A stretch of 63,956 nucleotides of DNA, counting the filler, from Hyphochytrium catenoides (Eukaryota > Protista > Hyphochytriomycota), in assembly GCA_900088475.1 (NCBI GenBank). It is 11 parts of 11 records of this genome, joined end to end, with 100 filler letters (N's around TTAATTAATTAA, not from the genome) between each part and the next. Parts side by side here need not be neighbours in the genome. Positions count along the whole stretch, not along the records: positions 17,607 to 44,883 come from FLMG01000107.1; 10 more parts are not named here. The stretch is one strand, 5' to 3'. The first letter of the stretch is position 1; every line of letters begins with the position of its first letter. Below the pieces are notes generated by a model that was not told the origin of the DNA, ran no database searches, and saw only the letters and a list, made by a program, of their open reading frames with translations. Shown here piece after piece: positions 17,927 through 44,722 of the stretch. Made by a program: the position numbers and the translations under genes.

Positions 17927-20900
17927 ATGGATCAGGAAAATCTGCCGGTGCAGATTAGTCAATCCTCTACCGCAGATGGCTGGGAGCTTAGTAAGGAGAA
18001 TGTAAAACCACTTAAAAGAGGTCGAAACGTTCAAAAGCTAAATGAGACTGTATCTGAAACAATGCAGTCCAGACAAGAGCGACTCGAGGATCAGAAGAGG
18101 TATACCCGTTTGTGGTCAAGGCCCATCAAGTAATAACTCACCAACACTGTATACCCCTTCAGAGCCTTCGAGGACTCTTTGCTTCAAGCAACCCACTCGC
18201 CCGACCCGCTCCAAATCTGGATAAGGTACTGAGACTTTGCTTTGCCATACGCCATAACGAACTTAGACCCAATACCTCGCAGGTACATCAAATGGGCACA
18301 GGCCGAGTATGTCACTGACAAATCGCAGGAAGTGCTACATCTTCTGGAGAGGTGTACTTCCAAGTTTAAGGCCGAGGAGCGATACAAAAATGATCCTCGA
18401 TTTATCAAGCTATGGATAGCCTATGTAGGCCTCTAGAAACTTACGCTTTGCTCACTTTGGTGAGTGCCCCTCTGACGCACTCCTCATGACCTGGCAGGCG
18501 GACATAATTCCAGACCCCTCAGAAGTCTTTAAGTTTATGTATAAAAACGGCATTGGTAAAGAGTTAGCCCTATTCTACATTGCTTGGGCTTGGGCCGCAG
18601 AGTCAGCCGGCAGTTACGCGAAGGCTGACAAGATCTACACCACCGGACTAGACAGGTAAGGGAACCTCGTGCAGCAACAACGACCCGAGTTCACTCTGTC
18701 ATCTGCTACTAGAGGTGCTTGCCCTCTAGAAGCACTCCAAAAACGACACAAAGAGTTCCAAAGGCGAATGAGCCGGATGTGGCTCCAGAAGTCTGAGGAA
18801 CACGAAGCTTCGAATCCCATTGAAGCAGAAGGTGCTTCAGCACGAGCCTTTGGCCAGGATCTATCGAGTAGTCGAAGCCAGCAATTTAAACCAAGAGGAA
18901 ACCTGCTTGTTCCTGCTAGCGAGGCTGCTAATCGTGCAAGAGTTTCGAATGCGGAAGTCAGCATCTTTTGTGATGAAAACTTGCCCTCTACGGTGCAAAC
19001 TCCCGTATTGGAGGGCTCCAATTCAGTCATCTGGAACAAGCTTGGAACCGAGAGGCAAAGGAGGAAAGAGAACACAGGTACATTCGCTATTTCAGTTAGT
19101 CTGCTCCCTTTCTCAGTTGTAATCTAAGTTGCTCGATGCTCAACAGTCAGTGCGACGAGTTGGAACAATCCTATAGCACATACGGAGAGCGTTAGCGATT
19201 CGAGAACTGTGGTACCGCAAGCTAGCTTTGCAATATTCACCGACGAAGGTTGCGCAACGTCAGAGAGCAAGAAAAAGGAGCCTCTCCCGTCGGCGAGACG
19301 AGGACTCACAATCCGTCAAAATCTTGAGGGTCCGAGTGGCGCTAATCAAGTATTGAAAAGTGGTGAAACGAAGCCTGCACTTGCCGAGAGAAAGGCACCT
19401 AAATCAAAGCAGGTCAAAAGGCCTTCGTCCTCCGCTTCCGCAGCTCAAATAGTGGGGCACGTGTCTGGAGAGGAAGAAGTCAGCTTTGAAGAACGACGCG
19501 CACTAAAATGGCTGAAGAAGAACTCTCTCGCCCGGACAGTGACGCTGAACCGAAACTCTCCGGCCGAGACTCTTGATGCTAGGTAAGTCATCAGCTAGCA
19601 GCGCATAGGTTACCTGGCCCAAGACTAAGCAATGTGCAGTGTCGCCTCAGCGGCAGTGCTTCGGAGACTATCCTTTCGCGACGACCCTGCACCAGGTTAG
19701 TGCATCTGCTTCCACCTCTTGGCACTTTCTTACGCTGACAGAGGACTATACAGCAGAATCTCAAGAAACGGTTGTGCTGTCCCAGCTGTCCGGAACAGCA
19801 AAAGGGCAAATACCAAACACTACGGGCCCACAGGCCGAAGAAAGTGAAGACATGACGATCAACACAAAATTCGCGATCAAGGACCTACAAGACATGTTCT
19901 CAAGCCCGTCCCCGCACAAAGCAGATAGTTCTGATATAGCAGCTGTAAAAACGCCAGTCGTGGTTCAGGATACTGCACCACCCACGTTCCAAATTTTCAG
20001 CGATATAAAGACTGAAACCGAACCAAACTCCAAGCCAGGATTTTTGAGCGAGCCTGGACAATCTGCCTCAGGGACAGGTGGATCTCTAGGCTTCGAGATA
20101 TTCTCAGACTCTTCGGCAGAAAATGAGGCAAGAGGACCCCGGCCAAGGCCCCGACCAGGACTGAGAGCCTATGGCCATAGCACAGTTGATACCGAGAACG
20201 TTAGAGCTCCGAGGAATCTAGCCAGGTAGTGCCTTTCAAATAAAAACTATGGAATAAAGAGTCAAAAGTGAAGTCTATGGCTAGTTTCAACAATCCCACA
20301 CTTGAGAATGAAAGGGATATCGACCAAACTAGCAAGAAACGCCAGCGCTTTGTGAGGTATGGACAATTCCACCATCCTACCTGGCTGTCTAACCTACTTC
20401 ACTAGGGAAGCGCTTGATACCTATGTAGTGACACGACCTAAGAAAGCCTCAAGGCTCCTTGTTGACCCATACAATGCTGACCATCGCAAGAAACTGATTG
20501 AAGATAAGAGAGTCCAAGACGACGTCCTTGCTGCTGAGACCACATTCCATTTTCCAAGTGTCAGTCTCGACTTCGGCTGCACTGGATCAAGGGCTGAGTC
20601 CATCTTTCTTGGGTCTACAAACTACGCTATTCTGGGCTTTTTAGGAAGAGGATCGTATGGGAATGTGTATGCCATACGCTCCACCAAAGGTCCCGCCCCT
20701 GTAACTTGCGCACTGAAGGTAACCTCCCAACCTAAAATTTAGGACGACTAGATTCAGTGAAACATCTTCGTACAGATTGAAAAGAAGTCAAAGTATCTGA
20801 TATGGGAGCTTCACATCCTTCATATGCTTCAAGAAAGAAGTAGCTCGAAAAACGAGTTTCTACCTCGAATGTATGGTTTGTACGTATACAGGGTAAGTCC

Positions 20901-22309: not shown

Positions 22310-24606
22310 CTATAGGCACTTGAGATGGTCTGCAGCATGTATGATGTCTCTCAGCACTGCGGCGGCCGTGGGAATCACGGTGGGCTCATCAATTTTCATG
22401 CTGAGAACCTCAAAGAGATCGGAGGTGAAGACTATCCCCATCTCCCAGGAACTCACGGAGCCCAAAAATGAGCCTGTCAGAAGGGAGGGTATACATCTTC
22501 ATAAGACAGAGAAGACTAAGAGAGAATGAGAAAGGCCAACTTCTACGCACTTTTGCTAATCTCCTTTGGAGCCACATTAAAGCTGTAGTTCCCGTCTGCC
22601 TGTCTCTCTGCGCATGCAAGCTAAGGATACCAACTATCAGATGATGAACAACCATGGCAACAATGGGATAACGACATCTTACAAGTTTAATAACATTTCC
22701 CCGCGCCTTGGCCTCTGCCAGGTCCTTGTGAGAGAGATCTGTGATACCTAGCAATTCAGTCAAGTCATGAGATCTATAAGTTTAGCCGACGGCAAGACAA
22801 AGATCTATAGACGGCCCAGTAACAGCTAGAAGCGTTGGCATCCTCAGAGCGACAGCGGAGCCATAACCAGGCGAGTTATATAACCATAAGGGCACGAATG
22901 ACCAAGGAAAAGAGGTGGACGAGAACGAAAGAGTTTGAGAAAAGCAGACAAGTGACATAGCACTGTCGGTTTACCTTGTACCCGAACATCCGAGAGCTTT
23001 GCTACCTTCGAAGGACGCAATACGCTGTTAGCGATTATGACTAGTTTGTTCGCTGTATCCCAGCCACCAACATCTAGTGATGGGTCCGCCTCCGCTATGC
23101 CAAGTCGCTGGGCTTCTTGTAAGGAGGATTCATAGTCCTTTCCGCCTAGGGATCGAAGGGGGAGAATAACGTCAGAGGTAACACATTGTTGATTGGATGC
23201 GATCATGAATGAATGCAGATTGTACAACATGGTGACAAAGTGCGTAGGTGGTGCTATCTCTCGATACCTTCCATTGCACTAAGAATGAAGTTGGAGGTTG
23301 AGTTGAAGATGCCTTCTACTTTGTGAATGACTGCCGCCGTCATGTCCCTTACTCCAACATTCAAAACGGGCAAGCCCCCGCACACTGTTGCACTTGCCAG
23401 CAGTGGACAACGTCTCTCTTTGGCTAAGCTGAGGTGAACGAAAAAGACCATCAGCGGATCACGGAGAACGTTAGCCAAGAGCGAACTTGTGATGACGAGA
23501 TGCCGTGTTATAATAAGAAAAGACTATAATTAGAAAGGACCCGCAAGGGAAGCAGGGGAACAGAGAGTTTCGACCTAATCTGAGGAGAGTAACGTCTTCA
23601 TCACGAGAGTTAGTGGAAAGAAGAGGCTAGACAATCGCTATAGGAGGAAAAGACCGCAACCTTTATGGGTGGACGAAGCACCAGTTTGGGGGTCAACAGC
23701 GGACTCCTGCCGTGTTTGGACGTACCTGGTAAGTTCTTCGTAGTACAAGACCTAGAGAGAGCATAAGGAGGAGAACGGAGAGAGTTGTGTTGGCAGGAAG
23801 GGGAAAGACGAGACGTTTGAGACAAGAACGTTGAAGAGGACGGGCGGGATGGTGAGCCCTGGCCGCTGTCTTCCTATCTCATCGTAAGCCTCTTCCTTCC
23901 TTTGTCCTCACTACTCCCTATTTCATGTCCGCCATACACTTCCTCCCGTAGCCCCGTTTCCTCTTTGCAGCCTATCTATCTTCGCATCTGTAAGAGATCT
24001 CTCTCCTGGGACGGCTCTATACTCCTCGTCCTAACCCCTCTCCAGTATCTTTGTTCGCTTGCAGGACCAATGAGCCATACCTACCAGTGGTGACTTGTTG
24101 GCTAGAACTACGGCCTTCCCACGGCTTAGGGCAGTCCTAATGCAGGACACGGCGGGTTCCCCATCTGTCAGGTTTACCGTTGTAGCCTCCACAAGAATCT
24201 CGTACTCAACTTGTGCCGAGACCTCAAGGCCATTGGAGAAGCGTTGAGAGGCCTGGGGATGATCTGCCACGGACAATTTTTTGTTCTTGTGGTCGAGGAG
24301 AGACCTAGGAATGACAAGAGAACAAAGTGAGGACAGTGGAAGACTTGGTACAGTGCCTCCGCCAAGGGGTGGCGGAAGTGACGTGTGAGGTCTGTAAGGC
24401 GAAAGTGTTCCCTACTTCAGATCGAAGCCATCGGAGGCGTAAGCTCCGCCTCCCGAATCTGCAACTCCAACCACCTTTATTATGACTCCGTAGGTGCTTT
24501 GCAGCACTGCTGCCTTCTCAAGCAAGATTTGACAAAGATGGCGATTCACAGCTCCATAGCCAAGAAGGACGAGGCGGATTACCCGTTGTTTGCCCTGCTC
24601 CTGCAT
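22310..24606 (-). CDS. hom: Monofunctional homoserine dehydrogenase (short type, no aspartokinase or ACT domain), multi-exon
   Basis: Rossmann motif RLVLLGYGAVN, ILVEATTVNLTDGEPA...VVLANKSPLV, SATVCGGLPVL, EGIFNSTSNFILSAME, AQRLGIAEADPSLDVGGWDTANKLVIIAN, and C-terminal WEMGIVFTSDLF...PTAAAVLRDII...CL*. Exons join in frame at GT-AG sites. Confidence 0.9.
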
Positions 24607-25361
24607 GGCAGCACCGCTGGTTCCACTAATCATGCTGCTGATCAACGATGACGCCCTCTTATCCAATAGATAGACAGGCCGTGTCTCGAAGATCCAGCGC
24701 CTTTTAGCTCTATGCAAGTGCCTCACCTGCCGTGGCCCAGCCTGGCTCCAGATTATCAACAACAGGATCTGCACCTGACCCAGATCTGCAACCACCTTCA
24801 TCAGAATCTCTCTTCTGTGCCATCTAGGATTCCTATAGTGGCTCGCTAACGGCTAGAATTTTGTCCGTTTTGGATGTGATGATGGCGAAAGGTTACGAGG
24901 CCGAAGGAAAGAGCATGCCTGGCATCTTCCGACAGCTGCAGAGATAGGAGGAGGATATCGCGAGGGCTGACCAGCTCTTGTCACCCTTTAGGTTAAATAG
25001 AGGCAGAGGATAGCTTATGATAAATACACCGCATACACAGTCCTTCGCCAACACCCTGGTCCGCTGAGGACAACTCTAAGAGGAGGAGAGAGGCGCAGCT
25101 GCAGAGGTAGGAGGTGGACTAGACCTAAGGTAAAGATGGCTACCCCCAGCCTTTGCGTCTTTCCCTTTGTTTGTTAAGAGATATGTGATGTGTCGCGTTA
25201 TTCCACGTGAGGAGAACGTGGCCTGATCTCTAAACCTTAAGAACCCTTCTGTCCCTACGTTCTCCACCCAGTGGCCCCCTGAACTTGTCGAAGGCTTCTG
25301 AACTCTTCATAGCTCGGTCGCCTCACGGATCGCTATCTTTATGACAACAGTCACACAGTTC

Positions 25362-28300
25362 TCATAGCTTCTGTTGCAGCTGTTCGATCTGCTTGTGAAG
25401 CAGGTACCAGCCCGCACTAGAGCCGTGACTTAAGTACCACTCACCAGTACTAATGAGGGGAAGAAACGTTGACGAGATGAAGTTCACATTGATTTTGACT
25501 GCAGCTACCTGCCGCGGCAGAGAAATCGTCAGCAGGGAGGAAGACATGTTGAAAGTGGGGATGGAAGCAGCCTTCCCATAGCATTGTATTCCCCTTTGTC
25601 TGCTCCTGCCATCGATTTACCTGCTCTGATGAGAGCTTGCCTCCCTCGAGCTGGTCGCTAACTTCCTTCAGAACTTTCCTAAGTCCGTTTGATATTCCCG
25701 CAATAACAGCCGGAAGAAGTCCGCTGACAATCGAACAGTGAGGGCCGTGTGAGATGCCAGAAGCCCACCGAGACTAGAGCATTGAGCGAAGGAAGACTAA
25801 TGAATGGAGAACTAATGAAACAGTACGTCCGTACCTAGCAATTGAGACCTTGAAAGAGATTTCCGCCTGCATCTGCAGTACTGCGACATAAATACTTTGC
25901 AGAATGACGCGGATGGAAGGCGACAGCCTGCTAGGACCTCCTCCTCCATTCTCATCACTACCAATCCAACTGTCGTTCAGCACCCATTTTTCTTGCTTAA
26001 GTTGTCCCAAGAAGAAGGCCTAACGTGAAAGGGAAACGGAGTCAAAGATGATCCATACCCCTTCCATAGCGCGTTGTCGGCGTTCCCCCGCCTCTCTCTC
26101 CACTATCTGTTCGTCTTTTGAAGAGGACTTCTCGTGTGTGTCACTCTCTGCTTACAGTCTAGCTTTCTCCAATCATACGCAGTCCTCAAACCTTATATCT
26201 CGCTTTTTAGAGGCATCTGACCGCCACCACAAGTCTGTTCCAGGAACCCCTCTCCGCTGTGTCCGCTCCTCCGGCCAGATCAAACCCCCTGTCTCTTCTA
26301 AAGACTTTGCCTTCAGCCATGTGGAAAAGCCCTCTCTTTCTCGGTTTTACTTACTGTCAACTGGTCAAAGAAGAAGTCCACCTGCCGACCCACGTCCCGA
26401 GCTAGAATTCGACGAAGAAGTTGGGAGCAGGGGAGGACATCATCTTCCAGCCCTTTGCCTTCTGCATAGAGCGCTGCTATACATTGGACATATTCTCGAA
26501 ATGAACCCTCTAAGCGCTGGGATGCAGCGGATGAAGTCGATCCTGGTGCTTTAGATGCAGCAAGAGAGATGGAAGGCTTCTCTACTTCTCGTATGATGGA
26601 CGAAGTGTCGCTGAGGGTTAATTGCTTGACCAACATGGACATTATGTCGCTGAGATTCTCCGTCATCCACACCACGAAAGAGGTTGTCATTGACGGATTT
26701 TGAAATGAGAATCTACAGGAGCACGATGAAACTGATCAGCAGATGAACAAGTTTGGCGTTTAAGTAGGCACAAGGTATCTATCTTGAAGAAAGGAGGATG
26801 AAACAGGCAGGGTGAACCCAGAGCGGAGGAGGTGTAGCCGCCCCAATTTTGGGCCATAGTGCCTCCATGGCCACAGCAGCAAGAAATGGAGAAAGGAGGT
26901 CTGGGTAGAGAAGGCATCACAACAGAAAGTCAAGAGTGTCATACAAATAAGCAAATTCCTCTGCCACACTCTTCAAAAGGCCGAAAACTGTTCTGGATGT
27001 CTGACGAGTGTGCTCGAGCAGGTCTGTTCCCACTCTGACGGTTCGCAGAGCTTCACGCAACAGGGCCGACTATCAACCAACCCATGGGAGAGGATCCAGG
27101 GAGAGATGGAAGAATTAGGAAGGACATCAAAGAAAGCATTGTTAGTAAGGGCACCAAAATGGCAGTTTCGTAGGTCGGGAGAGCGACATTGAACTGCCCG
27201 GACTTGGTCTCTTTCCCTCTACATTGTTAAAATGGGCATGTACCTGATTGTGCAGGTAGAGGTCACAAGCAGTCCTCGCCATACCCAGACGGGACAGTAA
27301 AAGAAAAAGTCGGCGTTGATAAGAACGGCACTGCAAAGCCCGCACTCCTGAACTCAATTCCTCAACGATACGTCTCCGAAACTGAAGCTTGTGCAGTCGG
27401 AGCTGACCAGAAAGAGGAAGAATGACAGCGTTAGCAGTTTATAAGCGAGGCAGGAAGCAGGTGAAGTAAACGAAGGTACAGCCGAAACGAAATGAAGAAG
27501 AAGATTGGACTAAATCCAATAAGTGAACGGCTCAAAACCTCGCCATTCTATCTTAAGAAGGTAGGCAAGAGAAATTTGAAGCAATATAGAGTACGATAAG
27601 GAGCCTCAGAAGGAGAAATGAGCATCAGAATGGCAGGGTAAAGAGAGGAGAGACGATAGGACACACAACGGTCCAGCGTTAGGATCATTTTACATATTGA
27701 TTACCTGCTGCAGAACGTGTCCCATAGGATCTGCTTCTGACCCCAATTTCAAGCCATTCCCTTTGTCCGAATGGGCTGCGGCAGAACTGCTGAAGGAAGA
27801 GGAAGTAGAAGATATATATCCCTCGATTTTCTCTATAAGCTCAGCACTCTGCTTATAGTTTCTCTCGAAAACAAGCAGCTCTAGCTCTGAAAGCGCTTCC
27901 TCTACCCATTCTGGTAACTGCCGGTTGTTCTCCTCGTATGAGGGCCGCCGTGATACGGGTTCAGAGGCTTTGATACCTGCAAGCACATAGAAGACAGCAA
28001 GAGCCATAAATTTAGCTGAACCATTGACACGGCTCTTTCAAGAAGCAGACCCTTTGAAAGACGATGAGTGCTCAGCTTAAGCTTATACTTTGCGCTTGAG
28101 GTTATTGAAAAACTTCCTGATACAAGACGATGAGGGACCAAAGGGTGAAGACGTCGCAGTTGCTCCTACCATAACCGTCAATCAAAGTGACCCCTTTGAG
28201 CTCCTGTATGTGCTGTTGAAAGTCTTGCACTAGTCTCTTCAGGCGGCCCACATCCGCCTCCATGCTACGGATCTGTTCTGACGCCGATATGAAGGACTGG

Positions 28301-30863
28301 TACTTTTGGCAGACCTCGCGCTTGAGCTCTGTTTCTGTTAGACTCTGGGAGAGGATAGAATAGCCAAAGGTCCCAGCAGTTAAGCGGATAGCCCGACAAG
28401 TACGCAGCCCATGCATAGTTAGTACAACGTAGTCTGACATGATGGTGTCTTCAAGAGCACATAGCGGCCGTCAAGTAAGGACCCAGACAGTAGGGAGAAA
28501 AAGACATAGAAGACGTCCTATTGACGAAAGAAGAAAGACAGAGTCATCCAATGGTCCGAGAAAAGAGGTATGGAATAAAGACGGACGTGAATGTGAACGT
28601 TAAAGCAAGCGAGAGGGTCTATATATCCCATCTATGTTCCAAGGGTTGAGAGAAAGATAGAGCATAGACAGAAGTTGAGATGAAAGCAACCTTTGAGTTG
28701 AGGAGATCGAGGCAGTGAGCTTCTGCCTCTTGTTCTGTGTGTTCTTGCAGGTATTGCAGAGCATATTGTTGGGCATTGAACTCTCCAGAGCCAAAGGCCT
28801 GGGAGATATCGCCAACATGGCTTAAGCTCTCTAGGATATTGTCTTCCACAAACCTATAGAAGGTGCCTTGCTCATTCAGAAGGAGTCCAATGAGTTAGTT
28901 GGAGGCACAGGAGACAAGTAAAGAATTGTATTGGTTAGAGCGTAAGATAGAAGGAGGGTACGTCTCAAAGCCAGAAGGAGGAAGTTATTGTGGGGAGCTG
29001 CCATGAGTGAGATAAGGACTTAATGATTATGACACTGGCCCGCGAGCGATGCATCCTTCTCTAGTTGTCCTCTGCGCTGCAGCTCTTCCATCCTCGCAAA
29101 CTTCCACCTTTTAACTTCCTCCAGTCTTTACCTGAATCCTCGAAGTCCTTCCCTCGGACAGACTCGATAAAGTTCAGCTTCATCATCATCCGGCCCTGTT
29201 CCAGCGCCATTTCCCTAGTAATCTGAAGGCTAGACATCAGCCACTGAACAGCGTCTTTGCCTACCATTTGTCAAAAAGACACAGTCGAAGAGACGAAGAG
29301 GGGCCACATAAGTTAAGTTTGAGCCCGGGGAGACAGAGAAAGCGACAAATATAGAGTTAGTAACAGGCGTGGGTACAATCAAAGAGACCCGAATAGATTA
29401 GAGCATGCACAGCTTTGATGAACCAAAGACGAAGGGATAGTCTTAGAGACACTAAAGTCTAGCTCTTCTCCTCTCACCTACAAAGCAGTCAGCGAAGGAC
29501 TGTGCTAGATGTTTGTGATCTGATAAACTTATCTCTGAGGCCATCTGGCTAGCTAGCTTGGCATAGCGGAGCTCTGGCATACAAATAGGGCAAATTATGT
29601 GTTTCGGTCAGACGGGGATGACAGAGAGAGAGAGGGGAGAAACTGAGAGATGCAAAATCGTTAGGTTCAAAAAGATAAAGAAACTAGGGGCTATCCTCCT
29701 GGAGCGACGGCTATGTGAATCATTTATCCCGCTGTCTGGGTGCTTTCGCTCTGCGTCCCTGTTCCTTTGATATCCTCCATGTACTTCAAGCTAACATTCC
29801 GCCCTTCCTATGTCGTGTCGCTTCCTCCTTTCAGTACAGAGGCCCTCCATTGCCTCTTCTTTCTTACTGTCGCTGTTCTTCTGAAGCATGGACCCAACAT
29901 TGGTGCATTTCGTTAATGCTTCGACCCAGTCATCCCTTTCCTTTGAGGCTTGGCAGCGGTAGGTAAAGTTCTTCCTTTTGGTTGAGATCTGGAAGGCATT
30001 GGACGCCTGTACGTTAAGCAGAAGATCAAATGAGAGACCTCGAGTAATCTGCTTTTATCTCCGTCTCCTCCCTTTGTCGCCATCTCTTCTCTCTTCCCTT
30101 CATTCTTTTGAATACTTTGAGTGGAACCTCCCATACGTTATCTTAGACCCCCGTATTGCCTCTCCTCCGGGTTGGATTTTGTCAGGCCCATGCACCGGTC
30201 TTCGGATTCTCGGGGGTCACGCTACCTATAATAAGGATCTCTTTATCCATTCATCAGTTTCTCACGTATCTCATACATCGTCCTCGCTCATCCTCTTCTC
30301 TCCGCGAACTCGGTTCTTTGCCGACTTCTCTTCTGTCTTACCATGCTTGCGGGGAGTGCATTGAGCGTTGTTACATCTGAGAGAGGAACAGCATAGATTG
30401 GACTGGCCGTGGTGCTACCTTCGTAGACAAGAAACTTGTTCGCAGTGATTTGGATCAAACGGTCTTTCCATTGAGTGGAGCCCACCTGCAATGAATGCGA
30501 TTAGAACAGAATGCAATGTCAGAGAAAGATAGTGACCTTCCAGAGCCCAACGAACTGAAGGTCAGGGGACACATTGATGGAGATCGAGGAGATAGGGAGA
30601 GATGTGGGGAGGGCTCAAGGTTGGGACTATGGCTAAGGTGGAGCAGAGGGCAGCCAAAAGTAGATAAGTCCATGGATAGACAAGCCAGAGGTACCGAGCC
30701 CAGCAGGTTGCTCGCTCTCCGAGAGGGAGTTTAGGACTAAGAAGTAGGACAACTAGCTAACAGTACGATAAAAGGAGAGAGCGGTCTGAAAGCACTCTGA
30801 GGAACAAATTTCAACCTTCTCGCTCGCCTTGCCAGACTTCAGTACATCCTTGCCAACCGCCAT
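25362..30863 (-). CDS. EXO84: Exocyst subunit Exo84/EXOC8-like protein with N-terminal PH and DEP domains
   Basis: In-frame exons: MAVGKDVLKSGKASEK|VGSTQWKDRLIQITANKFLVYE...|ASNAFQISTKRKNFTYRCQASKERDDWVEAL (PH); DHKHLAQSFADCFVG|KDAVQWLM...TREMALEQGRMMMKLNFIESVRGKDFEDSG|TFYRF (DEP); FNAQQYALQYL...ELKREVCQKYQSFISASEQIRSME (Vps51-like N-terminal coiled coil); LPEWVEEALSELELLVFERNY, LLSRLGMARTACDLYL, TTSFVVWM (Exo84 C-terminal helical region). Confidence 0.8.
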
Positions 30864-31554: not shown

Positions 31555-31592
<38 letters not shown>

Positions 31593-31692
31593 GCTCTCTC
31601 TCTTCTCTCCCTCTCTCTCTCTCTCTCCCTCTCTCTCTCNNNNNNNNNNNNNNNNNNNNNNNNNNNNNNNNNNNNNNNNNNNNNNNNNNNNN

Positions 31693-31731
<39 letters not shown>

Positions 31732-31832: not shown

Positions 31833-32077
31833 CGCTGCCACCGTCTTCCATCTCCCTCTGGCATTCATCCCTTCTGTTGCTCTTCAGATCTGTCTCTCTC
31901 CGTCTCATCAGACCTGCTGGACGATACAAGGGCTACACCAGGGCTTTCACGGGGAAGAGAATCACGCACAGAGGCGCGTCCATCTCTCTGCTTTGTCACG
32001 AGAGACTGGCTCTTGCTTCTTCTCACCCTCTTCTCCTTGTCTTTGAGCTGCGCTCATCTCGTCGTTTCCTCAGCGCC

Positions 32078-33893
32078 ATGTCCTCTTCGAGGCCTCGGAC
32101 CCTGGTCGTGTTCGACTTTGACTGGTCGCTCGTGGACGATAATACTGATGTTTTCATTATTAAGCAGCTCCGGCCAGAGCTCATACAGACAATGGAAGAT
32201 TTGAGACGGCAGGTCCTCCACTACTTTCTCTTCCGCTTGCCTCCTGACACTTACTATTAAGTCTTTTCTTGACCGATTGACACTTCGTATCGCCTAGGAT
32301 TCTCATGGTACCGCCTGCTGATAGCCCTTCCCATCGCTCTTCGTCCTAGGTGCCTTCCTTCCATTCAGTCCTTTGGTAGCTCTATGGTCGCTCTCTTCTC
32401 TGTCTGACCTCTCTCGTCCCATTGTCCTCTCTAGGCCGTCCAATGGACTCAAATAGTAGACACAATGCTGCAGCTTCTGCACCAAGACGGAGTTACGAGA
32501 GAGGAGCTTGTCCGCGCATTAGTGCAAATTCCTATGCAGGAAGGTAGGAGGAACGCGAGAGAACAGCCAAGACTGACAGAGACAGAGAGAGAAGCGGGCC
32601 TAAGGATTAGAGAGCGAGGAATAGAGGGCCGAGAGAGAGAACAAAGACGCATAAAGGCAGAGAAAGAGGACTCCTATCTCGTATCCGCTGCCATGCAGTC
32701 TTACAGGCCGTACGATGTAGTTTCCGGCTTTAGGTTTTGCCTTTCATCCCATCAAGTTCCTCTTCTTGTTCTGACCTGAGCCCTTGGTGATCCAGGCTGA
32801 CCTTAAGCAACGCCTGTGTCTACTCTCTAAGTGTTACTTCTGGGCATGCGTGATAAGCCTCTCCTCCTTGTTCCTCTACTCTTCTAAGACTTTAACTTGT
32901 TCCCCACAATTCTACGCCTTTGCTATTGATTGTTCTCTCTAGGTATGACTGAGGCCATACGCCATGCTCACTCTCAGGGATGCGGGCTGCACATCATAAG
33001 TGATGCAAATACTGTCTTTATCTCGGAGATACTAAGAGAGAGGGAGCTCTCGTCCCTCTTCGAGAACATAGTAACAAATCCTGCATCCTTTGATGAGCGC
33101 GGAAGGCTGAGTGTGAGGACGTACCAATCCTCGCTCCCCTCAGGGCCCCACGATTGCAAGCTCTGTCCGGTTCAAATGTGCAAAGGTTAGCAGAAGGTGG
33201 AGTGACACATAGGCAGCCTCCTACTTGCCACTGAGAATGCTCCTCCACGCTGTCACTCCCTGCCTCCGCCTCTCACCCTTTTAAAGCTAGAGACTGACGA
33301 CTCCTTTTGCTTTGTCATGACCTCGTCAAACCTCTCTTTCTGCTTGCCATTACCTTTGCTTTATCAATGTCAGATGTGAATTTTTAACATGTGCACGGCT
33401 ACTCGTGTTAACGTCACCTCCTTGCTCTCCTGTACTTGCGCCTTCTTCCTTAACAGGAGACATTCTTCGCAGTTTGCGTCAGGGTTTCGACAGGGTTCTT
33501 TATGTGGGAGATGGGACAGGAGACTACTGCGCGGCAACGAGGATGACTGAGTAAAGTGCCCTTTAGCTCATTCACTTTCTTACCCTTAGGGCCCGTGTGC
33601 CTCTTGCCTACACCTAAAACGCGCCGCGCTGTCCTCGACTTCCAACCCGCCTCCATGCTACATAATCTATTGCCGCGATCTGCTTTACCTCTTCCGGTGT
33701 CTCACTTTGTGTCTCTCTTCATCCTCTTCAAAACGTATATAGCGGGGATGTCCTCCTAGCTCGCGCCGACTCGGTGGCAATGAAGTTCGGGCTTTTGAGA
33801 AAAATCCGGTCGAATCCTGAGTCAGTCAGTGCCAAGGTTATTGAGTGGTCCACAGGCTTAGATGTCCTGAGAGCCATCAAGGAACATGTCTAG
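32078..33893 (+). CDS. HAD-superfamily phosphatase, PHOSPHO1/PHOSPHO2 (pyridoxal-phosphate / phosphoethanolamine / pyrophosphatase-like) family
   Basis: MSSSRPRTLVVFDFDWSLVDDNTD (motif I), LHIISDANTVFISEIL (motif II), IVTNPASFDERGRL, HDCKLCPVQMCKG, VLYVGDGTGDYC (motif IV), DVLLAR; stop TAG at 33891-33893. Exact substrate cannot be read from sequence. Confidence 0.88.
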
Positions 33894-34170: not shown

Positions 34171-37100
34171 CTATCGCAATTCAGCAGCTATTTCTTCAAA
34201 ATGTGTAAGGCTTTCTGGGTTTCTCAAGGCGCTCTTGTTCTTTACTGGCCGCCCGTTCATGATATCTCGGACGGCCAGCTCTACCTTCTTACCACTAACC
34301 GTATGAGGGATATCGGGCACCTGGACAGAGATGGGAGGAGAGGTAAGATAAAGGTAGATGACCAGAGTACACCGGAGGTGAGATATCGACAGATTTACTA
34401 AGCTGTCATATCCCTGTCTCTCCTCTCTTTCCTCTCTCCACCTTCCATACCGTGAATATTTTCCATGGCACGTGTCGTGGGGAGCACTCATCCCTAATGG
34501 CCTTCTTGATCTTCGACTCCAATGCCTTATCCAGCTGTACGCCATCCGCCATTTGCAAAAATAACAGCACTCTTACGTCGGGAGTGCCGTCTGGAAGGGC
34601 ATAGTCTTGTCCGACCACAACGCTGTCCTTCACCTCGTCCATCTGCTCCTCTCTGTAACAATGTATAGTTAGTCTCAATGCCTCATGACTGAACAGGGGG
34701 GAGATGGCGCCCACGCAGTCAGGGGGTAGACAATAGCTTCTTTCAAAAGATGGATTAGCAGGAGAGAGAGATAACACCATAAGGAGGCCAGGACTAGTAC
34801 GCGGAGCATCTAAATGTGAAGGTTGAGGAAGAGGTGGGGGACCAGAGCAGTACTTACAATAGCCTGTACAAGTCGGCCGTCCCGATGCGCACTCCTCCTG
34901 GATTCAGCGTGGCATCCGATCGACCATAGATGATCAGACCTGAGGAAAGGGAAGGTCGGTTACCGCCTAAGTCATAAGCAGCTCGGGACAAGATGGCTTG
35001 ATGGGCAACAAGAAAGGAAAGAGACATGGTCAGAAGGAAGAACTAACTACCATGATGACTTGTCTTCTCTGCATAGTCCCCGTGCCTCCACACATTCTTG
35101 AACACGTCGAAGTAAGCAGAGTGATACTTGCTGCCGCCCTCATCATCCCAGAAGCAGATAGGCATGGACGGAAAGGGCTTTAAACAGACCAGCTCCCCCT
35201 TCTGCCCGACAACCTCCTTCGCTTCTTCGTCGAACACAGCGACGTGAAGGCCTGAAGCAAGGGTGGAGAGGATAACAGAATTTTTAGAGAGAGAAAGGGA
35301 GTGGCGTCTTAGGGGGAACCACTTTTTCGTAGAGATTAAAGAGGACCGAGGGGTAGAGGGCTGCATGTGGCCAAACGAGAGAAAAGAAGAGATCATTCGC
35401 CGTACCTAAGCCAAGGCACTGAAGCTCGCCATCAAACACAGGCTTCAGAGGACATCCTAGCGCAAAGCATCCATTCAAGTCTGTTCCGCCGCTAATTGAT
35501 GCAAACTGAGGGAAAGAGACACACGATGCAGTAGTCAGCAAATACGCCTATAATAATCTGGACCAGTAAGTAATAGAATCCGAAGGGTGTTCACTCTCAA
35601 CAAGGTACTACTAAATAGCAAAAAGTCATAATAAGAAATAACCTAGTCAACGGAGGCGAAGGAAGAGGACCTGGACGTCATCCTTGATTTGGGAATAGAC
35701 AAAGTTGAAGACCGACGTCGTCGCAGGAGAGCCTGTGGAGCAGATTGTGCGCAGGGAAGATAAATCAAACTCCTCCTTCGGCTTCAGACCAGACTGCAGC
35801 ACTGCCCCTAGGTACCGCGCACTGTCAAGCAGCAAAAAAAGAGCAAGAAGAACTCGGTAAGGTTGATGGCACCATGGACAAGCACAATCCGGTAAGAGGA
35901 GGATAAACGCTGGCCAACGGCCCTTGTAGAGCCAAAGGTTGACGTAGAAAAAACTAGCAAATCTACAGGAAAGATTGCATATGGGGGCCGAACGGCGATA
36001 GCAGGACAGCTTCCAAGGGGAAGAAGAAAAATGCGACGAAAGGAAAGCAGCGCTTGTAGGTAGACACAGCGAGACACAGCAGAAGTAGAATAGAGGAGCC
36101 TTGACTGACGTTAGCAGTTAACGCCCGCCGTTGAGCAAAAATGAGTGCGAATTTTGAGATGTCCCTTCCATTGCCCTTCCATGCCCTTACCTCGTTCCAA
36201 AGACGTTAATCTTTAGCTGTTCGACATACTTCCATAGCACTGAGGCGTCGGGATGTAAAGGATTACCATCAAAGAGAACAACAGCTGCCCCGACTCCTAG
36301 CGCCGAGGTCAGCCAGTTCCACATCATCCAACCCGTCGTTGTATAATAGAACACTCTGTCTCCCTTCTTGACATTGGTATGTAGCCTTAGCTCTTTAAGA
36401 TGGTTGAGAAGGATGCCACAGCCCTGCACAATGCACTTCGGCAGTCCAGTGGTACCAGAAGAGTACATGATGACGCAAGGATGAGAGAATGGGAGCTGCT
36501 CAAACTGAATCTTTTCTCCTTCCTTTACGATCTCTCTCTCTTTTTGGACAAACTCTTCATAGCCCACGGCCTTTGGGACAATGCCTGCAAACGAGACGCG
36601 ATAGCGAGGATTCAACGTATAGTTGAAAACGACAACATGCTCTACGGAAGGAAGATCTGCAGCAATCTGGGCCAGCTTATCCATCGTCTCAACGCGTTTG
36701 CCTTTGAAGAAGTAGCCATCAGCGGCAAATAATATCCGCGGCCGAATCTGTGAGAAGCGATCTAATACGCCCTGGTGGCCAAAGTCAGGAGAGCAGGAAG
36801 ACCATACTCCTCCGACGGCAGTTGTAGCCAACATGGCAATGCCTGCCTCTGGAATGTTTGGTATGTACGCAGCCACGCGGTCCCCAGGTCTGACGCCGAT
36901 GTCTCTTAGCTTTTTCGCAAGCACAGCTACCTCGTGATACAGTTTCTTATACGTGATTGTAACAGGCTCCGTGCTGTTGTCGCTCACGAAGATATAGGCA
37001 GGTTTGTTGTCACGATATCGCAGCAAGTTCTCGGCGAAGTTTAGCTTTGCTCCAGGAAAGAACTTCGCCTTCTCTATATCCTCGAAGTTCTCAACCACGG

Positions 37101-37374
37101 CGCTATAGGGCGATGAATGTTTGATGTCCAGAAACTCCCAGAGAAGTGCCCAGAAGTCCCCGGGATTGGCAACTGACCACTGCCAGAGGGATTCATAGTC
37201 GTGGTCACGGATGTTAGCGTCAGGAAAGCGCTCTTGAGCCTCTGTCAGGAACTTTGTCATCTCACAAGAATCGAGAAGCTCTTTTGATGGCTTCCATAAC
37301 GGAGACATCTTTGACTTCTTGGTGTCAGCATGCTCGGCACCAGACCCATCATCTCTGCTCAGCTTCTGAACCAT
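34171..37374 (-). CDS. AACS: Acetoacetyl-CoA synthetase (acetoacetate-CoA ligase)
   Basis: PLWKPS...YESLWQWSV...[129 protein letters not shown]. The start is taken at MVQKLS (ATG 37374); the next Met is MSPLW (~37308). Confidence 0.95.
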
Positions 37375-37722
37375 TATAAGATCTCCCGCGATCTTTTCGC
37401 TCTTAGCTTCAGGGTTATCCTTTCTGCCAACCGCAGACCGAGACGCAGACTTCTCTCTTGGGCACCTGCTGACTCTTTGGAGTTCAAGCTGCGGAGTGCG
37501 CGCCAAGTTCCAGACTTCTTCGTCTCTGTTGAAGCTCTTGTTGAGCTTGTTGAAGTGCCAAGGGAGCCGCGAAAAAGTTGATGGGAATCGTTTCGTGGGA
37601 GACAGAGTCATCTAACGGATACCGACAGAGCAGAGTCAAACATATAAACCTCCCTAGACATTACAATAATGTGCTCGTGAGACAGAAAGGGGAAGGAGCT
37701 AGAACCTAGGAAGGCAGAGAGG

Positions 37723-38333: not shown

Positions 38334-41612
<3,279 letters not shown>

Positions 41613-42077: not shown

Positions 42078-44722
42078 TTAGCAACTGTCTCCAGGAGAGC
42101 GGAGCCAAAAAGCCTTACTGATGTTGGGAGCAGCTGTCTTGGTCCTGTCATCTTCCGCCGTACTTTCTGTCTCGCGGGGTGCTGTAGGTCTCCCGCGCGT
42201 TTCCCTATCAAGCAGCTTTGACCATTGACAGCACTCTTGGCCATAAGTAGGTTCCACTGGTATATTCGCCACGTGCCCTCTGCAACAAGGGATAGAAGGG
42301 AGCCAAGTGAGGATGGCAAGATGGAGCAGAGAAAGAGGCAGAAGCACGCATAGGACGATTAAAGGACAGACAGGAGAGGTCATAGGACACGGCAGCAGGA
42401 AACAGCGGCAAGATTCAGGGACAGGGGGGATGAAGAAAAAGAGGAGAGGCATAAAAGCAACGACTAGTGCAAGAAACAAAAAGGAAAGTAAGGGGTAAGT
42501 GGCGTGAAAGGTTAAGCGGCACACAGCTCACCATTGTAGGAAGACAAAGCCCGGTGCATAGCCTCCACGGCTTCCTCCGATTGCTTAGGATCACAAGAAT
42601 CTGGGATGATTATTAGATGCTCAGTCTCATTCGACACATCCGTTTCTTCTTTCTTCAACGACAAAGAGGTTTCTTTCGTTGGCAGCGGCTTGTCATGTGG
42701 CAGCCCTCCTGCAAGGTTCGCACCATTTTGTTCCATCTTCTCCGTCAAGTCATACTGCATTGCTAAGCAAAGAAGACGTGATCACAAGAGGCAGCAGCAA
42801 AACACAGCAACAAAGTCCAATTGAGCCAAACGGGTGACAGCTAACGCCAAACACCGACGTCAACAAGCATACCATTTTCCTTATCATCTGCAACATCAGG
42901 ATTGGCCCGTGCGCTGTCATGCTTGCGCTTGCCTTTTGTGGGCCTTTCGTTCTCTTGCCGAAACTCTAAGACGTGTGGGTCAGCAGCACCACATTCGCGA
43001 GCAAGCCGTACAACTACAAGGTAGCAGGCGTTAGGAGATCACTGTCATATCTTAGCTCTTGTCCGCACTTTCGCTTCGAACAATTTCGCTAAAGGTCCAT
43101 TCTTCCGCAGCTTCTACATCCCGCGGTTTATTTCTCAGTTTGTTCCTTCCCTTCGCTTACCGACCGCTTGGACTTCTCCCTCATAAGCGCTGCACGAATG
43201 CAGTTACCTACCTTTGTCTGAAGGCAATGTCCCCTTCTCGAATGCTAGTGGGATGCTGGGGGCGTCCATCGATTTGGCGAAGGCAACTGCCTTCCGGAAA
43301 GAAGAAGTCCTGTGGCTAATGCCCAGACGCTTATAGTTGTCACTGAACGAGCACACTTTTGAGCAGTCCACCCAGGTCCTAAGAGCCGGAGTAACTGTCA
43401 GAGTGTGCTAACAAAGAATACTATGTCCAAGAAGCAGCACTGAAGAAGTAGAGCTTGTACGGAGAGATAAAGACCAACAAGGAGGTCTTCGTTGGCCAGG
43501 AAAGGCCGTTTCGAGGTGAGAACGGACACTACACCGCGACAAGTATATCACGAGCTACGCAAAGCCGATACTAAGAGACAAAGAGAAGGCAGGGTAAAGA
43601 CTGTTAGTGTGCACTATAGTTGCTTACTGGCTGATCTTGAGCTTGCCACTCATAGCTTGGTCAATAAACTTTACGAACAGGCGTCTCTCCTCAGCTAAAC
43701 TAGCAGCTCCCCGCTCATCTTCGGGAAGGCGAAGGGTTACCTGTGTTATATCATAGTTCCGAGTTTTGGTTAAAGAGATCGCGAAGAGGAAGACAAAGCT
43801 AGACGATGACGAACGAGGACTTAGAGAAAGAAGTCTGGAAATGCCAACGGAGAGAAAGGAGGAGGAACAGAGAGGGGAGGAGAGTGGGGGCGCGAGAGAG
43901 AGAGATGGGAGGTGGGGAGAGAGAGAATAGGATTGAAGGGAGAGAGACACGAGGGAGAGAGAGAAGAGGGAGAAAAGGGCATCGGGGCTTTCTTCTCAGT
44001 TGTAATAAGTGGGTAGACTGGAGTGGGTAGACTGAGTGGGATCACCGAATGGAACATACGAGAATGTAAGATGGAGGAAAGTGTAAGTGAGAGGGAAAGA
44101 CCTGTCACTCACCAGGCCTGGCCACCAGGGGAACCTCTCAAGCTTCGCCCAGCATTTGACGAAAATGGTGTGGGAGTTAAGTGGTGCGATGCGATTGGAG
44201 CCGCGGTCTAGCCATTCATTCCACTTCTCGTCCCATCCATCGTAAGCAATGTACACCTGAGCATGGTGACAAACGTTACATAAGCAGAGGCACGAACACG
44301 GAAGTTGAGAACACTCCCAGACGTAAGGATTCTTCTTGAGCTTTTACTGACAAGGTTCGTCTTTTCTCTTTCTCGGGTTCATTGCCTTCTGATGGACTCT
44401 TCCCAACACTTCATCTCTCGTTTCCGGCGATCGCCTTGCTCACATCGTGTTTGGACTTCTGCGCTCTCACTCTTCCTCGCTCTCCGCACCCTCTCCTCTT
44501 TGCATTTAAGAGGCAGCTCTTCATAGCGTTACCTATTTCTTTCCTCTACTGTTCTCTGCTTTTCGATATTTAATGGCTTTCCTCATCTCTTTGTTGCTCC
44601 CATCTTGCTGAGAGATTCCCCACTCCGCTTCCCACCTTCTCTTTCGTAGCTTTGAGTATCTTAGCGGTGTTCCATATCCCGTCTGTATCCAAAGCATCCA
44701 CCCGCGACCCCACAGTGAACAT
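42078..44722 (-). CDS. Chromatin-reader protein with Tudor/chromo-barrel-like domain plus PWWP domain; 5' end may lie in the gap
   Basis: MFTVGSRVDALDTDGIWNTAKILKATKEK|VYIAYDGWDEKWNEWLDRGSNRIAPLNSHT (Royal-family aromatic cage), then CWAKLERFPWWPGL|V...LFVKFID...|RTWVDCSKVCSF...FRKAVAFA (PWWP). Low-complexity C-terminal exons; the stop at 42078 is less certain. Confidence 0.75.

What the first reader, a model, noticed from the sequence alone, without database searches (positions are those of the whole stretch)
25362..30863. PH-DEP-Exo84 fusion: exocyst subunit with an N-terminal signalling module
Seen: the PH exons (30863-~29868), DEP exons (~29575-29130) and Exo84 body splice in frame at GT-AG sites. 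The end of the DEP domain (GTFYRF) shares one exon (28866-~28691) with the start of the Vps51-like coiled coil, so this is not two merged gene models. Established: yeast and animal Exo84 carry their PH domain after the N-terminal coiled coil, plant Exo84 lacks it, and DEP domains (Dishevelled, RGS, pleckstrin, P-Rex) target membranes and GPCRs. Here the coiled coil runs almost directly into the C-terminal helical region, and a pleckstrin-like PH-DEP sits in front. Inference: independent gain of a lipid/receptor-sensing module that could link G-protein or phosphoinositide signalling to exocytic tethering. I know of no described Exo84 with DEP.
Basis: partly seen in the sequence, partly recalled or inferred. 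Interest (0 to 1): 0.72.

Follow-up and report, generated by a model that had tools for sequence, protein, structure and literature searches.

The report
Exocyst Exo84 gene with PH-DEP head
An intron-rich eukaryotic gene appears to encode the vesicle-tethering subunit Exo84 with a membrane- and receptor-sensing PH-DEP module at its front end, an arrangement I found described nowhere; it rests on one gene model without transcript evidence or relatives.

Summary
On the minus strand, 30863..25362, fourteen exons join at GT-AG sites with the frame kept, giving 2250 nt or about 749 aa.

Scanned exon by exon, Pfam gives collinear hits:
- PH in two halves, each below the cut-off.
- DEP on one exon, 33.2 bits, above the cut-off.
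- VPS51_Exo84_N on one exon, 38.2 bits, above the cut-off.
- Exo84_C on two successive exons, profile 1-44 then 57-102, both below the cut-off.

Exon 6 (28866..28691) carries both the last DEP strand (GTFYRF) and the start of the Exo84 coiled coil. It has no in-frame Met, and intron 5 offers no usable start. A stand-alone Exo84 transcript is therefore unlikely. Only about 27-29 residues separate the coiled coil from Exo84_C, so there is no internal PH. The body resembles the PH-less Arabidopsis Exo84 (PMC11555703).

Not shown:
- Relatives: none turned up in any search.
- The taxonomic spread of the architecture: the joined protein was not searched or folded.

Literature searches found no paper linking Exo84 or the exocyst to a DEP fusion.

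Verdict: probably a real PH-DEP-Exo84 fusion, a new variant of a known kind, of moderate interest.

The parts
30816..30863 (-). Exon 1: start codon and first PH strand (MAVGKDVLKSGKASEK)
   Evidence: First start codon after an in-frame stop 8 codons upstream; GT donor at 30815.
30342..30485 (-). Exon 2: PH domain, N-terminal half, containing the W-K-D-R motif
   Evidence: Pfam PH profile 17-54, E 0.061, 14.3 bits; AG/GT borders, phase 0.
29868..30006 (-). Exon 3: PH domain, C-terminal half with the closing helix
   Evidence: Pfam PH profile 68-104 (E 0.018, 16.0 bits), PH_RASGAP E 0.0016, PH_6, PH_11.
29478..29573 (-). Exon 4: PH-DEP linker and start of DEP
   Evidence: In frame, phase 1 to 1, AG/GT borders. 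No Pfam hit of its own at 31 aa. Placed by position in front of DEP profile position 21.
29132..29260 (-). Exon 5: core of the DEP domain
   Evidence: Pfam DEP PF00610, 33.2 bits against a cut-off of 32.7, E 4.9e-08, profile 21-65 of 72.
28691..28866 (-). Exon 6: junction exon with the last DEP strand (G)TFYRF, a roughly 20-aa linker and the first half of the Vps51/Exo84 N-terminal coiled coil
   Evidence: Seven residues (GTFYRFV) fill the seven missing DEP profile positions 66-72. The exon has no Met, and a stop lies 10 codons upstream in its frame.
28176..28344 (-). Exon 7: second half of the Vps51/Exo84 N-terminal (CorEx) coiled coil; an alternative in-frame donor lies 6 nt downstream (exon end 28170)
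   Evidence: Pfam VPS51_Exo84_N, 38.2 bits against a cut-off of 24.2, profile 39-84 of 87.
27705..27976 (-). Exon 8: short linker, start of Exo84_C, and a Ser-rich insert
   Evidence: Pfam Exo84_C profile 1-44, E 0.027, 14.7 bits. The protein-atlas leads are all CATCHR tether families.
27244..27402 (-). Exon 9: Exo84_C continued
   Evidence: Pfam Exo84_C profile 57-102, E 0.0036, 17.6 bits.
26945..27069 (-). Exon 10: helical body
   Evidence: In-frame GT-AG exon; no family hit.
26355..26712 (-). Exon 11: helical body, the largest exon (119 aa)
   Evidence: In-frame GT-AG exon. No family hit and no relative found.
25835..26019 (-). Exon 12: helical body; an alternative donor exists after ...EISFK
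   Evidence: In frame. The boundary was chosen by frame and intron length and has not been tested.
25621..25723 (-). Exon 13: helical body
   Evidence: In frame.
25362..25508 (-). Exon 14: C-terminus and stop codon; the end is uncertain because a consensus donor GTGAGT lies at 25444

Best explanation
One 14-exon gene on the minus strand (30863..25362) encodes a protein of about 749 aa. From the N-terminus it has a PH domain (aa ~5-100), a DEP domain (~124-192) and a linker of about 20 aa. Then come the Vps51/Exo84-type N-terminal coiled coil (~210-296), 27-29 residues, and an Exo84-type helical (CATCHR) body (~323 to the end). The body is the PH-less kind of Exo84 known from Arabidopsis. The membrane-binding function that opisthokont Exo84 carries as an internal PH is here supplied in front of the assembly helix, together with a DEP domain. 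Inferred mechanism: the coiled coil pairs the protein into exocyst subcomplex II (Sec10, Sec15, Exo70, Exo84) as usual. The N-terminal PH-DEP head projects from the complex, much as the long disordered N-terminus of yeast Exo84 is tolerated there. It binds acidic lipids or phosphoinositides; the PH has the K...W-K-x-R basic pattern in strands 1-2. It may also bind a receptor tail or G-protein partner, and so bias where or when vesicles are tethered. Shown: exon structure, frame, domain identity and order, the shared junction exon, and the lack of an internal PH. Inferred: that the exons are spliced as modelled, that the protein is a true exocyst subunit, and all lipid or receptor binding.
For: All junctions are GT-AG with the frame kept over 2250 nt. 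Collinear Pfam hits fall on six exons, with DEP and VPS51_Exo84_N above their curated cut-offs on single exons and Exo84_C hit twice in order. Exon 6 holds both the DEP end and the coiled-coil start. It has no Met, the first Met of exon 7 lies inside the domain match, and the four ATGs of intron 5 open only 14-42-codon ORFs. Intron 5 (265 nt) lies within the range of the other introns (111-346 nt). By contrast, the distance from this gene's stop to my estimate of the next same-strand gene's start codon (homoserine dehydrogenase), read off the ORF list, is about 700 nt. The model frame has the best codon-usage score in 13 of 14 exons, and retained introns would stop translation in 12 of 13 cases. 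Among the tether-complex families, only Exo84_C hits exons 8-9. Exo84 without an internal PH is documented for Arabidopsis and T. brucei (PMC11555703).
Against: No homologue was found, so there is no conservation or covariation of the exon structure. Both Exo84_C hits are below the family cut-off taken singly, and exons 10-14 hit nothing. There is no sequence-level match to solved Exo84 chains. Several donors are weak (GTTGAA, GTTGCT, GTTATG, GTACAT, GTACGG). Only this piece of the genome is on hand, so a second, canonical Exo84 elsewhere in it would make this a paralogue of unknown role.
Confidence: 0.7

Rival explanations
1. Two genes or two transcripts: a small PH-DEP protein and a separate Exo84, merged only in the model.
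For: No transcript data could be obtained. Retaining intron 5 would end a PH-DEP protein after 23 more codons. Gene fusions in models of compact genomes are a common artefact.
Against: The DEP domain would lose its last strand. That strand (GTFYRFV) sits in exon 6 in the right frame and is exactly as long as the 7 missing profile positions. Exon 6 has no Met and a stop lies 10 codons upstream. The first in-frame Met is in the middle of the coiled-coil domain, and the intron-5 ATGs give ORFs of only 14-42 codons. The 265-nt gap is intron-sized, against roughly 700 nt (my estimate from the ORF list) between this gene and the next one on the same strand.
Confidence: 0.1
2. A single gene whose helical body is not the exocyst's Exo84. 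It would be another Vps51/COG1/Exo84-fold tether subunit, or a lineage-specific paralogue working outside the exocyst.
For: The N-terminal Pfam family is shared by Vps51, Exo84 and COG1. The Exo84_C hits are sub-threshold (14.7 and 17.6 bits against a cut-off of 32). The atlas ranks Dor1-, COG4- and Sec5-like clusters as high as or higher than Exo84_C, all below the trust level. There are no matches to solved Exo84 chains.
Against: Two successive exons hit the same family, Exo84_C, at collinear profile positions (1-44, then 57-102), starting at the expected distance after the coiled coil. No other tether family's C-terminal model hits. The summed score (32.3 bits) reaches the family cut-off.
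Confidence: 0.15
3. The gene is as described, but the architecture is not new. PH-DEP-Exo84 proteins may already sit unremarked in annotated proteomes of the same large lineage, for example stramenopiles or other protists.
For: I could not query domain-architecture databases or search the joined protein. DEP domains take part in unusual domain combinations in oomycetes (papers listed). The neighbouring AACS gene groups with oomycete sequences and one EukProt protist sequence.
Against: None of about 8.4 million full texts links Exo84 or the exocyst with a DEP fusion. Reviews of Exo84 evolution list only the PH as an extra domain (PMC6784791, PMC11555703). An exhaustive HMMER search with the coiled-coil exon found no relative among 1.84 billion representatives.
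Confidence: 0.35

Closest known systems
Exo84 / EXOC8 of opisthokonts (yeast Exo84p, human EXOC8)
   Same: An N-terminal Vps51/Exo84-type coiled coil followed by an Exo84_C helical body, with one PH domain in the protein (PMC11555703).
   Different: There the PH lies between the coiled coil and the helical body. Here only 27-29 residues lie there, the PH is at the extreme N-terminus, and a DEP domain follows it. No sequence-level similarity to solved Exo84 chains was detectable exon by exon.
Plant EXO84 (Arabidopsis thaliana)
   Same: The coiled coil runs directly into the CATCHR helical region with no internal PH (PMC11555703).
   Different: Plant EXO84 has no PH or DEP at all and a longer helical region (aa 140-752). 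Here about 430 residues follow the coiled coil, and a PH-DEP head of about 200 aa precedes it.
Pleckstrin (PH-DEP-PH) and other PH/DEP signalling proteins (P-Rex, RGS7/EGL-10 family, Dishevelled)
   Same: A PH immediately followed by a DEP. From my memory, not tested here, the DEP ends in G-T-F-Y-R-F as in RGS7-type DEP domains.
   Different: There is no second PH, no RGS, DH or PDZ domain. The module is fused to a vesicle-tethering subunit instead.
Sec3 / EXOC1, the other PH-bearing exocyst subunit
   Same: An N-terminal PH-type lipid-binding domain placed in front of the CorEx helix and helical rods (PMC6784791). This is the same layout as found here.
   Different: Sec3 belongs to subcomplex I, its PH is of a different type and it has no DEP. 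The helical body here hits Exo84_C, not the Sec3 models.

Membership tests
Exo84 (exocyst subunit) | N-terminal Vps51/Exo84/COG1-type coiled coil (CorEx helix) | tested here: met
   Exon 7: PF08700, 38.2 bits against a cut-off of 24.2, profile 39-84 of 87. Exon 6 supplies the preceding half by position.
Exo84 (exocyst subunit) | Exo84_C helical (CATCHR) region after the coiled coil | tested here: inconclusive
   Exons 8 and 9 hit PF16528 at profile 1-44 (14.7 bits) and 57-102 (17.6 bits). The hits are collinear, but each is below the 32-bit cut-off. Profile positions 103-205 are unmatched. The joined protein was not scanned.
Exo84 (exocyst subunit) | PH domain between the coiled coil and the helical region (opisthokont form only; absent in Arabidopsis and T. 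brucei) | tested here: not met
   Only 27-29 residues lie between VPS51_Exo84_N profile position 84 and Exo84_C profile position 1. The feature is not universal (PMC11555703).
Exo84 (exocyst subunit) | Detectable sequence similarity to characterised Exo84 proteins | tested here: not met
   Exons 7, 8 and 9 were searched against all PDB chains and gave no Exo84 chain at E up to 1-10. The exhaustive search with exon 7 gave only spurious coiled-coil hits.
Exo84 (exocyst subunit) | Assembly with Sec10, Sec15 and Exo70 into the octameric exocyst | not testable with these tools
   Needs co-purification, or complex modelling of the joined protein with this genome's other subunits, which are not in the window.
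DEP domain (PF00610) | Match to the family profile at or above the curated cut-off | tested here: met
   Exon 5 alone: 33.2 bits against a cut-off of 32.7, E 4.9e-08, profile 21-65 of 72. Exons 4 and 6 supply the flanking residues in frame.
PH domain (PF00169 and clan) | Match to the family profile | tested here: inconclusive
   There are two collinear halves: exon 2 at profile 17-54 (14.3 bits) and exon 3 at 68-104 (16.0 bits; PH_RASGAP 19.2 bits). Each is below the 25.1-bit cut-off, though their rough sum exceeds it.
Pleckstrin-type PH-DEP-PH | A second PH domain after the DEP | tested here: not met
   The coiled coil begins about 20 residues after the DEP, and no PH hit occurs in exons 6-14.
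Vps51 (GARP/EARP) or COG1 | Shared N-terminal domain together with a C-terminal region of that family rather than Exo84 | tested here: inconclusive
   The N-terminal domain is shared by all three families. The only C-terminal family hit is Exo84_C. No Vps51- or COG1-specific test was possible without homologues.

The most novel reading that the evidence does not exclude
A lineage with a PH-less (plant-type) Exo84 body has independently re-acquired membrane binding by fusing a PH-DEP signalling head in front of the assembly helix. That would wire receptor, G-protein or acidic-lipid signals directly into the exocyst. Such an architecture has not been described for any exocyst subunit. It might also help explain why Exo84 is often reported 'absent' in some protist groups, where it may simply be too divergent to detect.
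Probability: 0.3. Interest if true: 0.6.

Novelty: new variant of a known kind. Interest (0 to 1): 0.45.

Why it matters
Exo84 and Sec3 are the only exocyst subunits known to carry an extra domain, a PH, and whether Exo84 has that PH differs between eukaryotic supergroups. An Exo84 with a PH at the other end plus a DEP would be a natural experiment. It would show that membrane or signal input to subcomplex II can be attached at the N-terminus of the CorEx helix, and it would link a classical receptor/G-protein adaptor domain physically to vesicle tethering. It would also show how divergent Exo84 can be, which bears on reports that the subunit is lost in several protist lineages. The weight of all this is limited: it is one gene model in an unidentified, unsampled organism, without transcript or comparative support.

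Tried and rejected
With no run ids, read laying could not be used.
3. Exhaustive HMMER search of 1.84 billion representatives with exon 7 gave four hits. All are coiled-coil, TPR or LRR proteins of unrelated families.
4. Word search with exon 11 gave no hit. The tool's length window excludes full-length relatives of exon-sized queries anyway.
6. PDB sequence searches with exons 5, 7, 8 and 9 gave no DEP or Exo84 chain.
7. The protein atlas gave only sub-threshold CATCHR leads for exon 8 and nothing for exon 11.
8. Organism identification: the exact AACS ORF is not on record. Its relatives are 53-58% identical: oomycetes, one EukProt protist and many bacteria. One clade member is bacterial. The 'probably stramenopile-related' reading is therefore weak.
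9. Synteny through AACS relatives showed no tether gene nearby.
10. It has no reference, so only exon-wise references were used.
11. The third word search was left unused, because exon-sized queries cannot reach full-length relatives.
Full report
**What is there.** The piece (17607-44883) is eukaryotic DNA of about 49% G+C with many short introns. It has fourteen exons:

- 30863-30816
- 30485-30342
- 30006-29868
- 29573-29478
- 29260-29132
- 28866-28691
- 28344-28176
- 27976-27705
- 27402-27244
- 27069-26945
- 26712-26355
- 26019-25835
- 25723-25621
- 25508-25362

Every intron begins with GT and ends with AG. Intron lengths are 111-346 nt, the codon phase carries correctly across all thirteen junctions, and the sum is 2250 nt, or 749 codons plus the stop.

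**Start codon.** The ATG at 30863 is the first start codon after an in-frame stop eight codons upstream. The PH domain begins immediately after it, so this is a credible start.

**Coding support.** I trained a codon-usage score on the conserved part of the neighbouring acetoacetyl-CoA synthetase ORF. It is highest in the model frame in 13 of 14 exons, and exons generally score above the best frame of the introns. Twelve of the thirteen introns would bring an in-frame stop within 4-33 codons if retained.

**Domain identity, exon by exon.** Each exon was given to the tools by reference in its own frame. Pfam gave the following:

| Exon | Family | Profile positions | Score |
|---|---|---|---|
| 2 | PH | 17-54 | E 0.061 |
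| 3 | PH (also PH_RASGAP, E 0.0016) | 68-104 | E 0.018 |
| 5 | DEP | 21-65 of 72 | 33.2 bits, cut-off 32.7 |
| 7 | VPS51_Exo84_N | 39-84 of 87 | 38.2 bits, cut-off 24.2 |
| 8 | Exo84_C | 1-44 | E 0.027 |
| 9 | Exo84_C | 57-102 | E 0.0036 |

- Exons 4, 6 and 10-14 gave nothing useful.
- The hits sit on one strand, in the order PH, DEP, coiled coil, Exo84_C, and at collinear profile positions, which cannot be chance.
- Two consecutive exons hitting the same one of 24,736 families in the right order is by itself an event of about 1e-7.
- In model residues: PH is about 5-100, DEP about 124-192, the coiled coil about 210-296, and Exo84_C starts at 323.

- Exon 5 ends at DEP profile position 65. The split codon plus the first residues of exon 6 read G-T-F-Y-R-F-V, exactly the seven residues needed for positions 66-72.
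- The same exon then runs through about 20 residues into the first half of the Vps51/Exo84 coiled coil.
- Exon 6 has no methionine, and in its frame a stop lies ten codons upstream of the acceptor.
- The first in-frame Met downstream is residue 28 of exon 7, inside the domain match.
- The four ATGs within intron 5 open ORFs of only 14-42 codons. An Exo84-only mRNA starting in intron 5 could therefore not encode the assembly helix, and a PH-DEP-only product would lack the last DEP strand.
- Intron 5 (265 nt) is of ordinary intron size. By my estimate of its start codon from the ORF list, the next gene on the same strand (homoserine dehydrogenase) starts about 700 nt after this gene's stop.

This is good structural evidence but not transcript evidence.

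**Is the body Exo84?**
- For: among the tether-complex families, only Exo84_C hits exons 8-9, it does so twice and collinearly, the two scores sum to the family cut-off, and it begins where expected after the coiled coil.
- Against: each hit is sub-threshold. The rest of the body matches nothing. Exon-wise searches of all PDB chains found no Exo84. The protein-atlas leads for exon 8 are a mixture of tether families (Dor1, COG4, Exo84_C, Sec5, Vps53), all below the trust level.
- I put Exo84 family membership at about 0.85 and true exocyst membership somewhat lower. I cannot see whether the genome has another Exo84.

**Layout compared with known Exo84.** Only 27-29 residues separate the end of the coiled coil from the start of Exo84_C, so there is no internal PH. 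A 2024 review states that animal and yeast Exo84 are coiled coil, PH, then CATCHR. Arabidopsis Exo84 lacks the PH and runs from the coiled coil straight into the helical region, and no PH is predicted in T. brucei (PMC11555703). A 2019 survey says that only Sec3 and Exo84 carry an additional domain, a PH (PMC6784791). The body here is thus of the PH-less kind, with a PH-DEP head in front. That layout is reminiscent of Sec3, whose PH also precedes the CorEx helix.

**Relatives and novelty.** No relative could be retrieved.
- An exhaustive HMMER search of 1.84 billion representatives with exon 7 gave four hits, all unrelated coiled-coil or repeat proteins.
- A word search with exon 11 gave nothing.
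- Two metagenome scans gave nothing.
- The organism itself is not in the collections. Its AACS ORF is not on record, and its best relatives are only 53-58% identical.
- In a quick tree the AACS falls with oomycetes and one EukProt protist (support 0.99). Bacterial sequences are close by, and one clade member sits on a bacterial contig. 'Stramenopile-related' is therefore only a weak guess.
- Full-text searches found no paper that connects Exo84 or the exocyst with a DEP fusion, and nothing relevant on oomycete exocysts.
The joined sequence has no reference and was left out. Novelty therefore rests on the literature and on my own knowledge. I rate the chance that similar proteins already sit unremarked in databases at about one in three.

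**Mechanism (inferred).**
- The coiled coil would assemble the protein into subcomplex II as in other Exo84s.
- The PH-DEP head, joined by a short linker, would project from the complex.
- The PH has the basic pattern K9, K12, K16, W22-K23-D24-R25 in its first two strands, the kind associated with phosphoinositide binding.
- DEP domains bind acidic membranes and receptor tails in Dishevelled, RGS and Epac proteins (general knowledge).
- The head would then add or replace membrane and signal input for tethering. None of this was tested.

**Open details of the model.**
- Exon 7 has two tandem donors six bases apart (28176 and 28170), both in frame.
- The exon 12/13 junction has an alternative in-frame pair that would give a shorter intron.
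- Intron 13 has no in-frame stop.
- The last exon may end at a consensus donor at 25445 instead of running to the stop at 25362.
- Five donors are weak.

**Verdict.** Most likely this is a real PH-DEP-Exo84 fusion gene: a new variant of a known kind, of moderate interest, awaiting transcript evidence and an architecture survey.

Noticed in passing
window 34171-37611 (-) and 39990-41612 (+): An acetoacetyl-CoA synthetase gene (a 474-aa first-exon ORF with ACAS_N and AMP-binding domains) and an acetoacetyl-CoA thiolase gene (Thiolase_C exons) lie next to each other and are transcribed divergently. They catalyse successive steps of acetoacetate use. The synthetase is as close to deltaproteobacterial enzymes (55-57% identity) as to oomycete ones, which hints at an old bacterial origin.
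   Followed up: partly
window 31555-31727: CT/GA dinucleotide repeats flank an assembly gap (N run, 31640-31692). They lie in the roughly 1.2-kb region between the Exo84-like gene and the divergently transcribed phosphatase gene.
   Followed up: no
window 31877-33190 (+): A PHOSPHO1/2-type phosphatase gene (Pfam Put_Phosphatase, E 2e-25 on one exon; DxDxS/T motif 'VVFDFDWSLVDDN' in the first exon). It is oriented head to head with the Exo84-like gene.
   Followed up: partly
window 22410-24801 (-): A homoserine dehydrogenase gene lies downstream on the same strand (Pfam Homoserine_dh on the exon at 22844-23230). By my reading of the ORF list, its probable start lies about 700 nt after the Exo84-like stop codon.
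   Followed up: partly
window 19209-20742 (+): Exon-like ORFs with the repeated motifs 'FQIFSD' and 'FEIFSD', followed by a kinase-type glycine loop (GRGSYGNVY). This may be a Bub1/Mad3-like checkpoint kinase, but there was no Pfam hit on the pieces tried.
   Followed up: partly
window 43996-44256 (-): An exon with a PWWP motif (Pfam PWWP, E 7.6e-05), at the edge of the piece.
   Followed up: no
window 28170-28176 (-): Tandem 5' splice sites six bases apart (GTTATG then GTAGGA), both in frame. Using the second would add two residues (Gly-Tyr) to the linker after the coiled coil.
   Followed up: no
L002 (Logan SRR7796775 contig, 5350 nt): An intronless 685-aa AACS groups with the window's enzyme and the EukProt protist sequence in the quick tree (54% identity, support 0.82). 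Next to it is an unannotated 967-aa gene. The organism is unknown.
   Followed up: no
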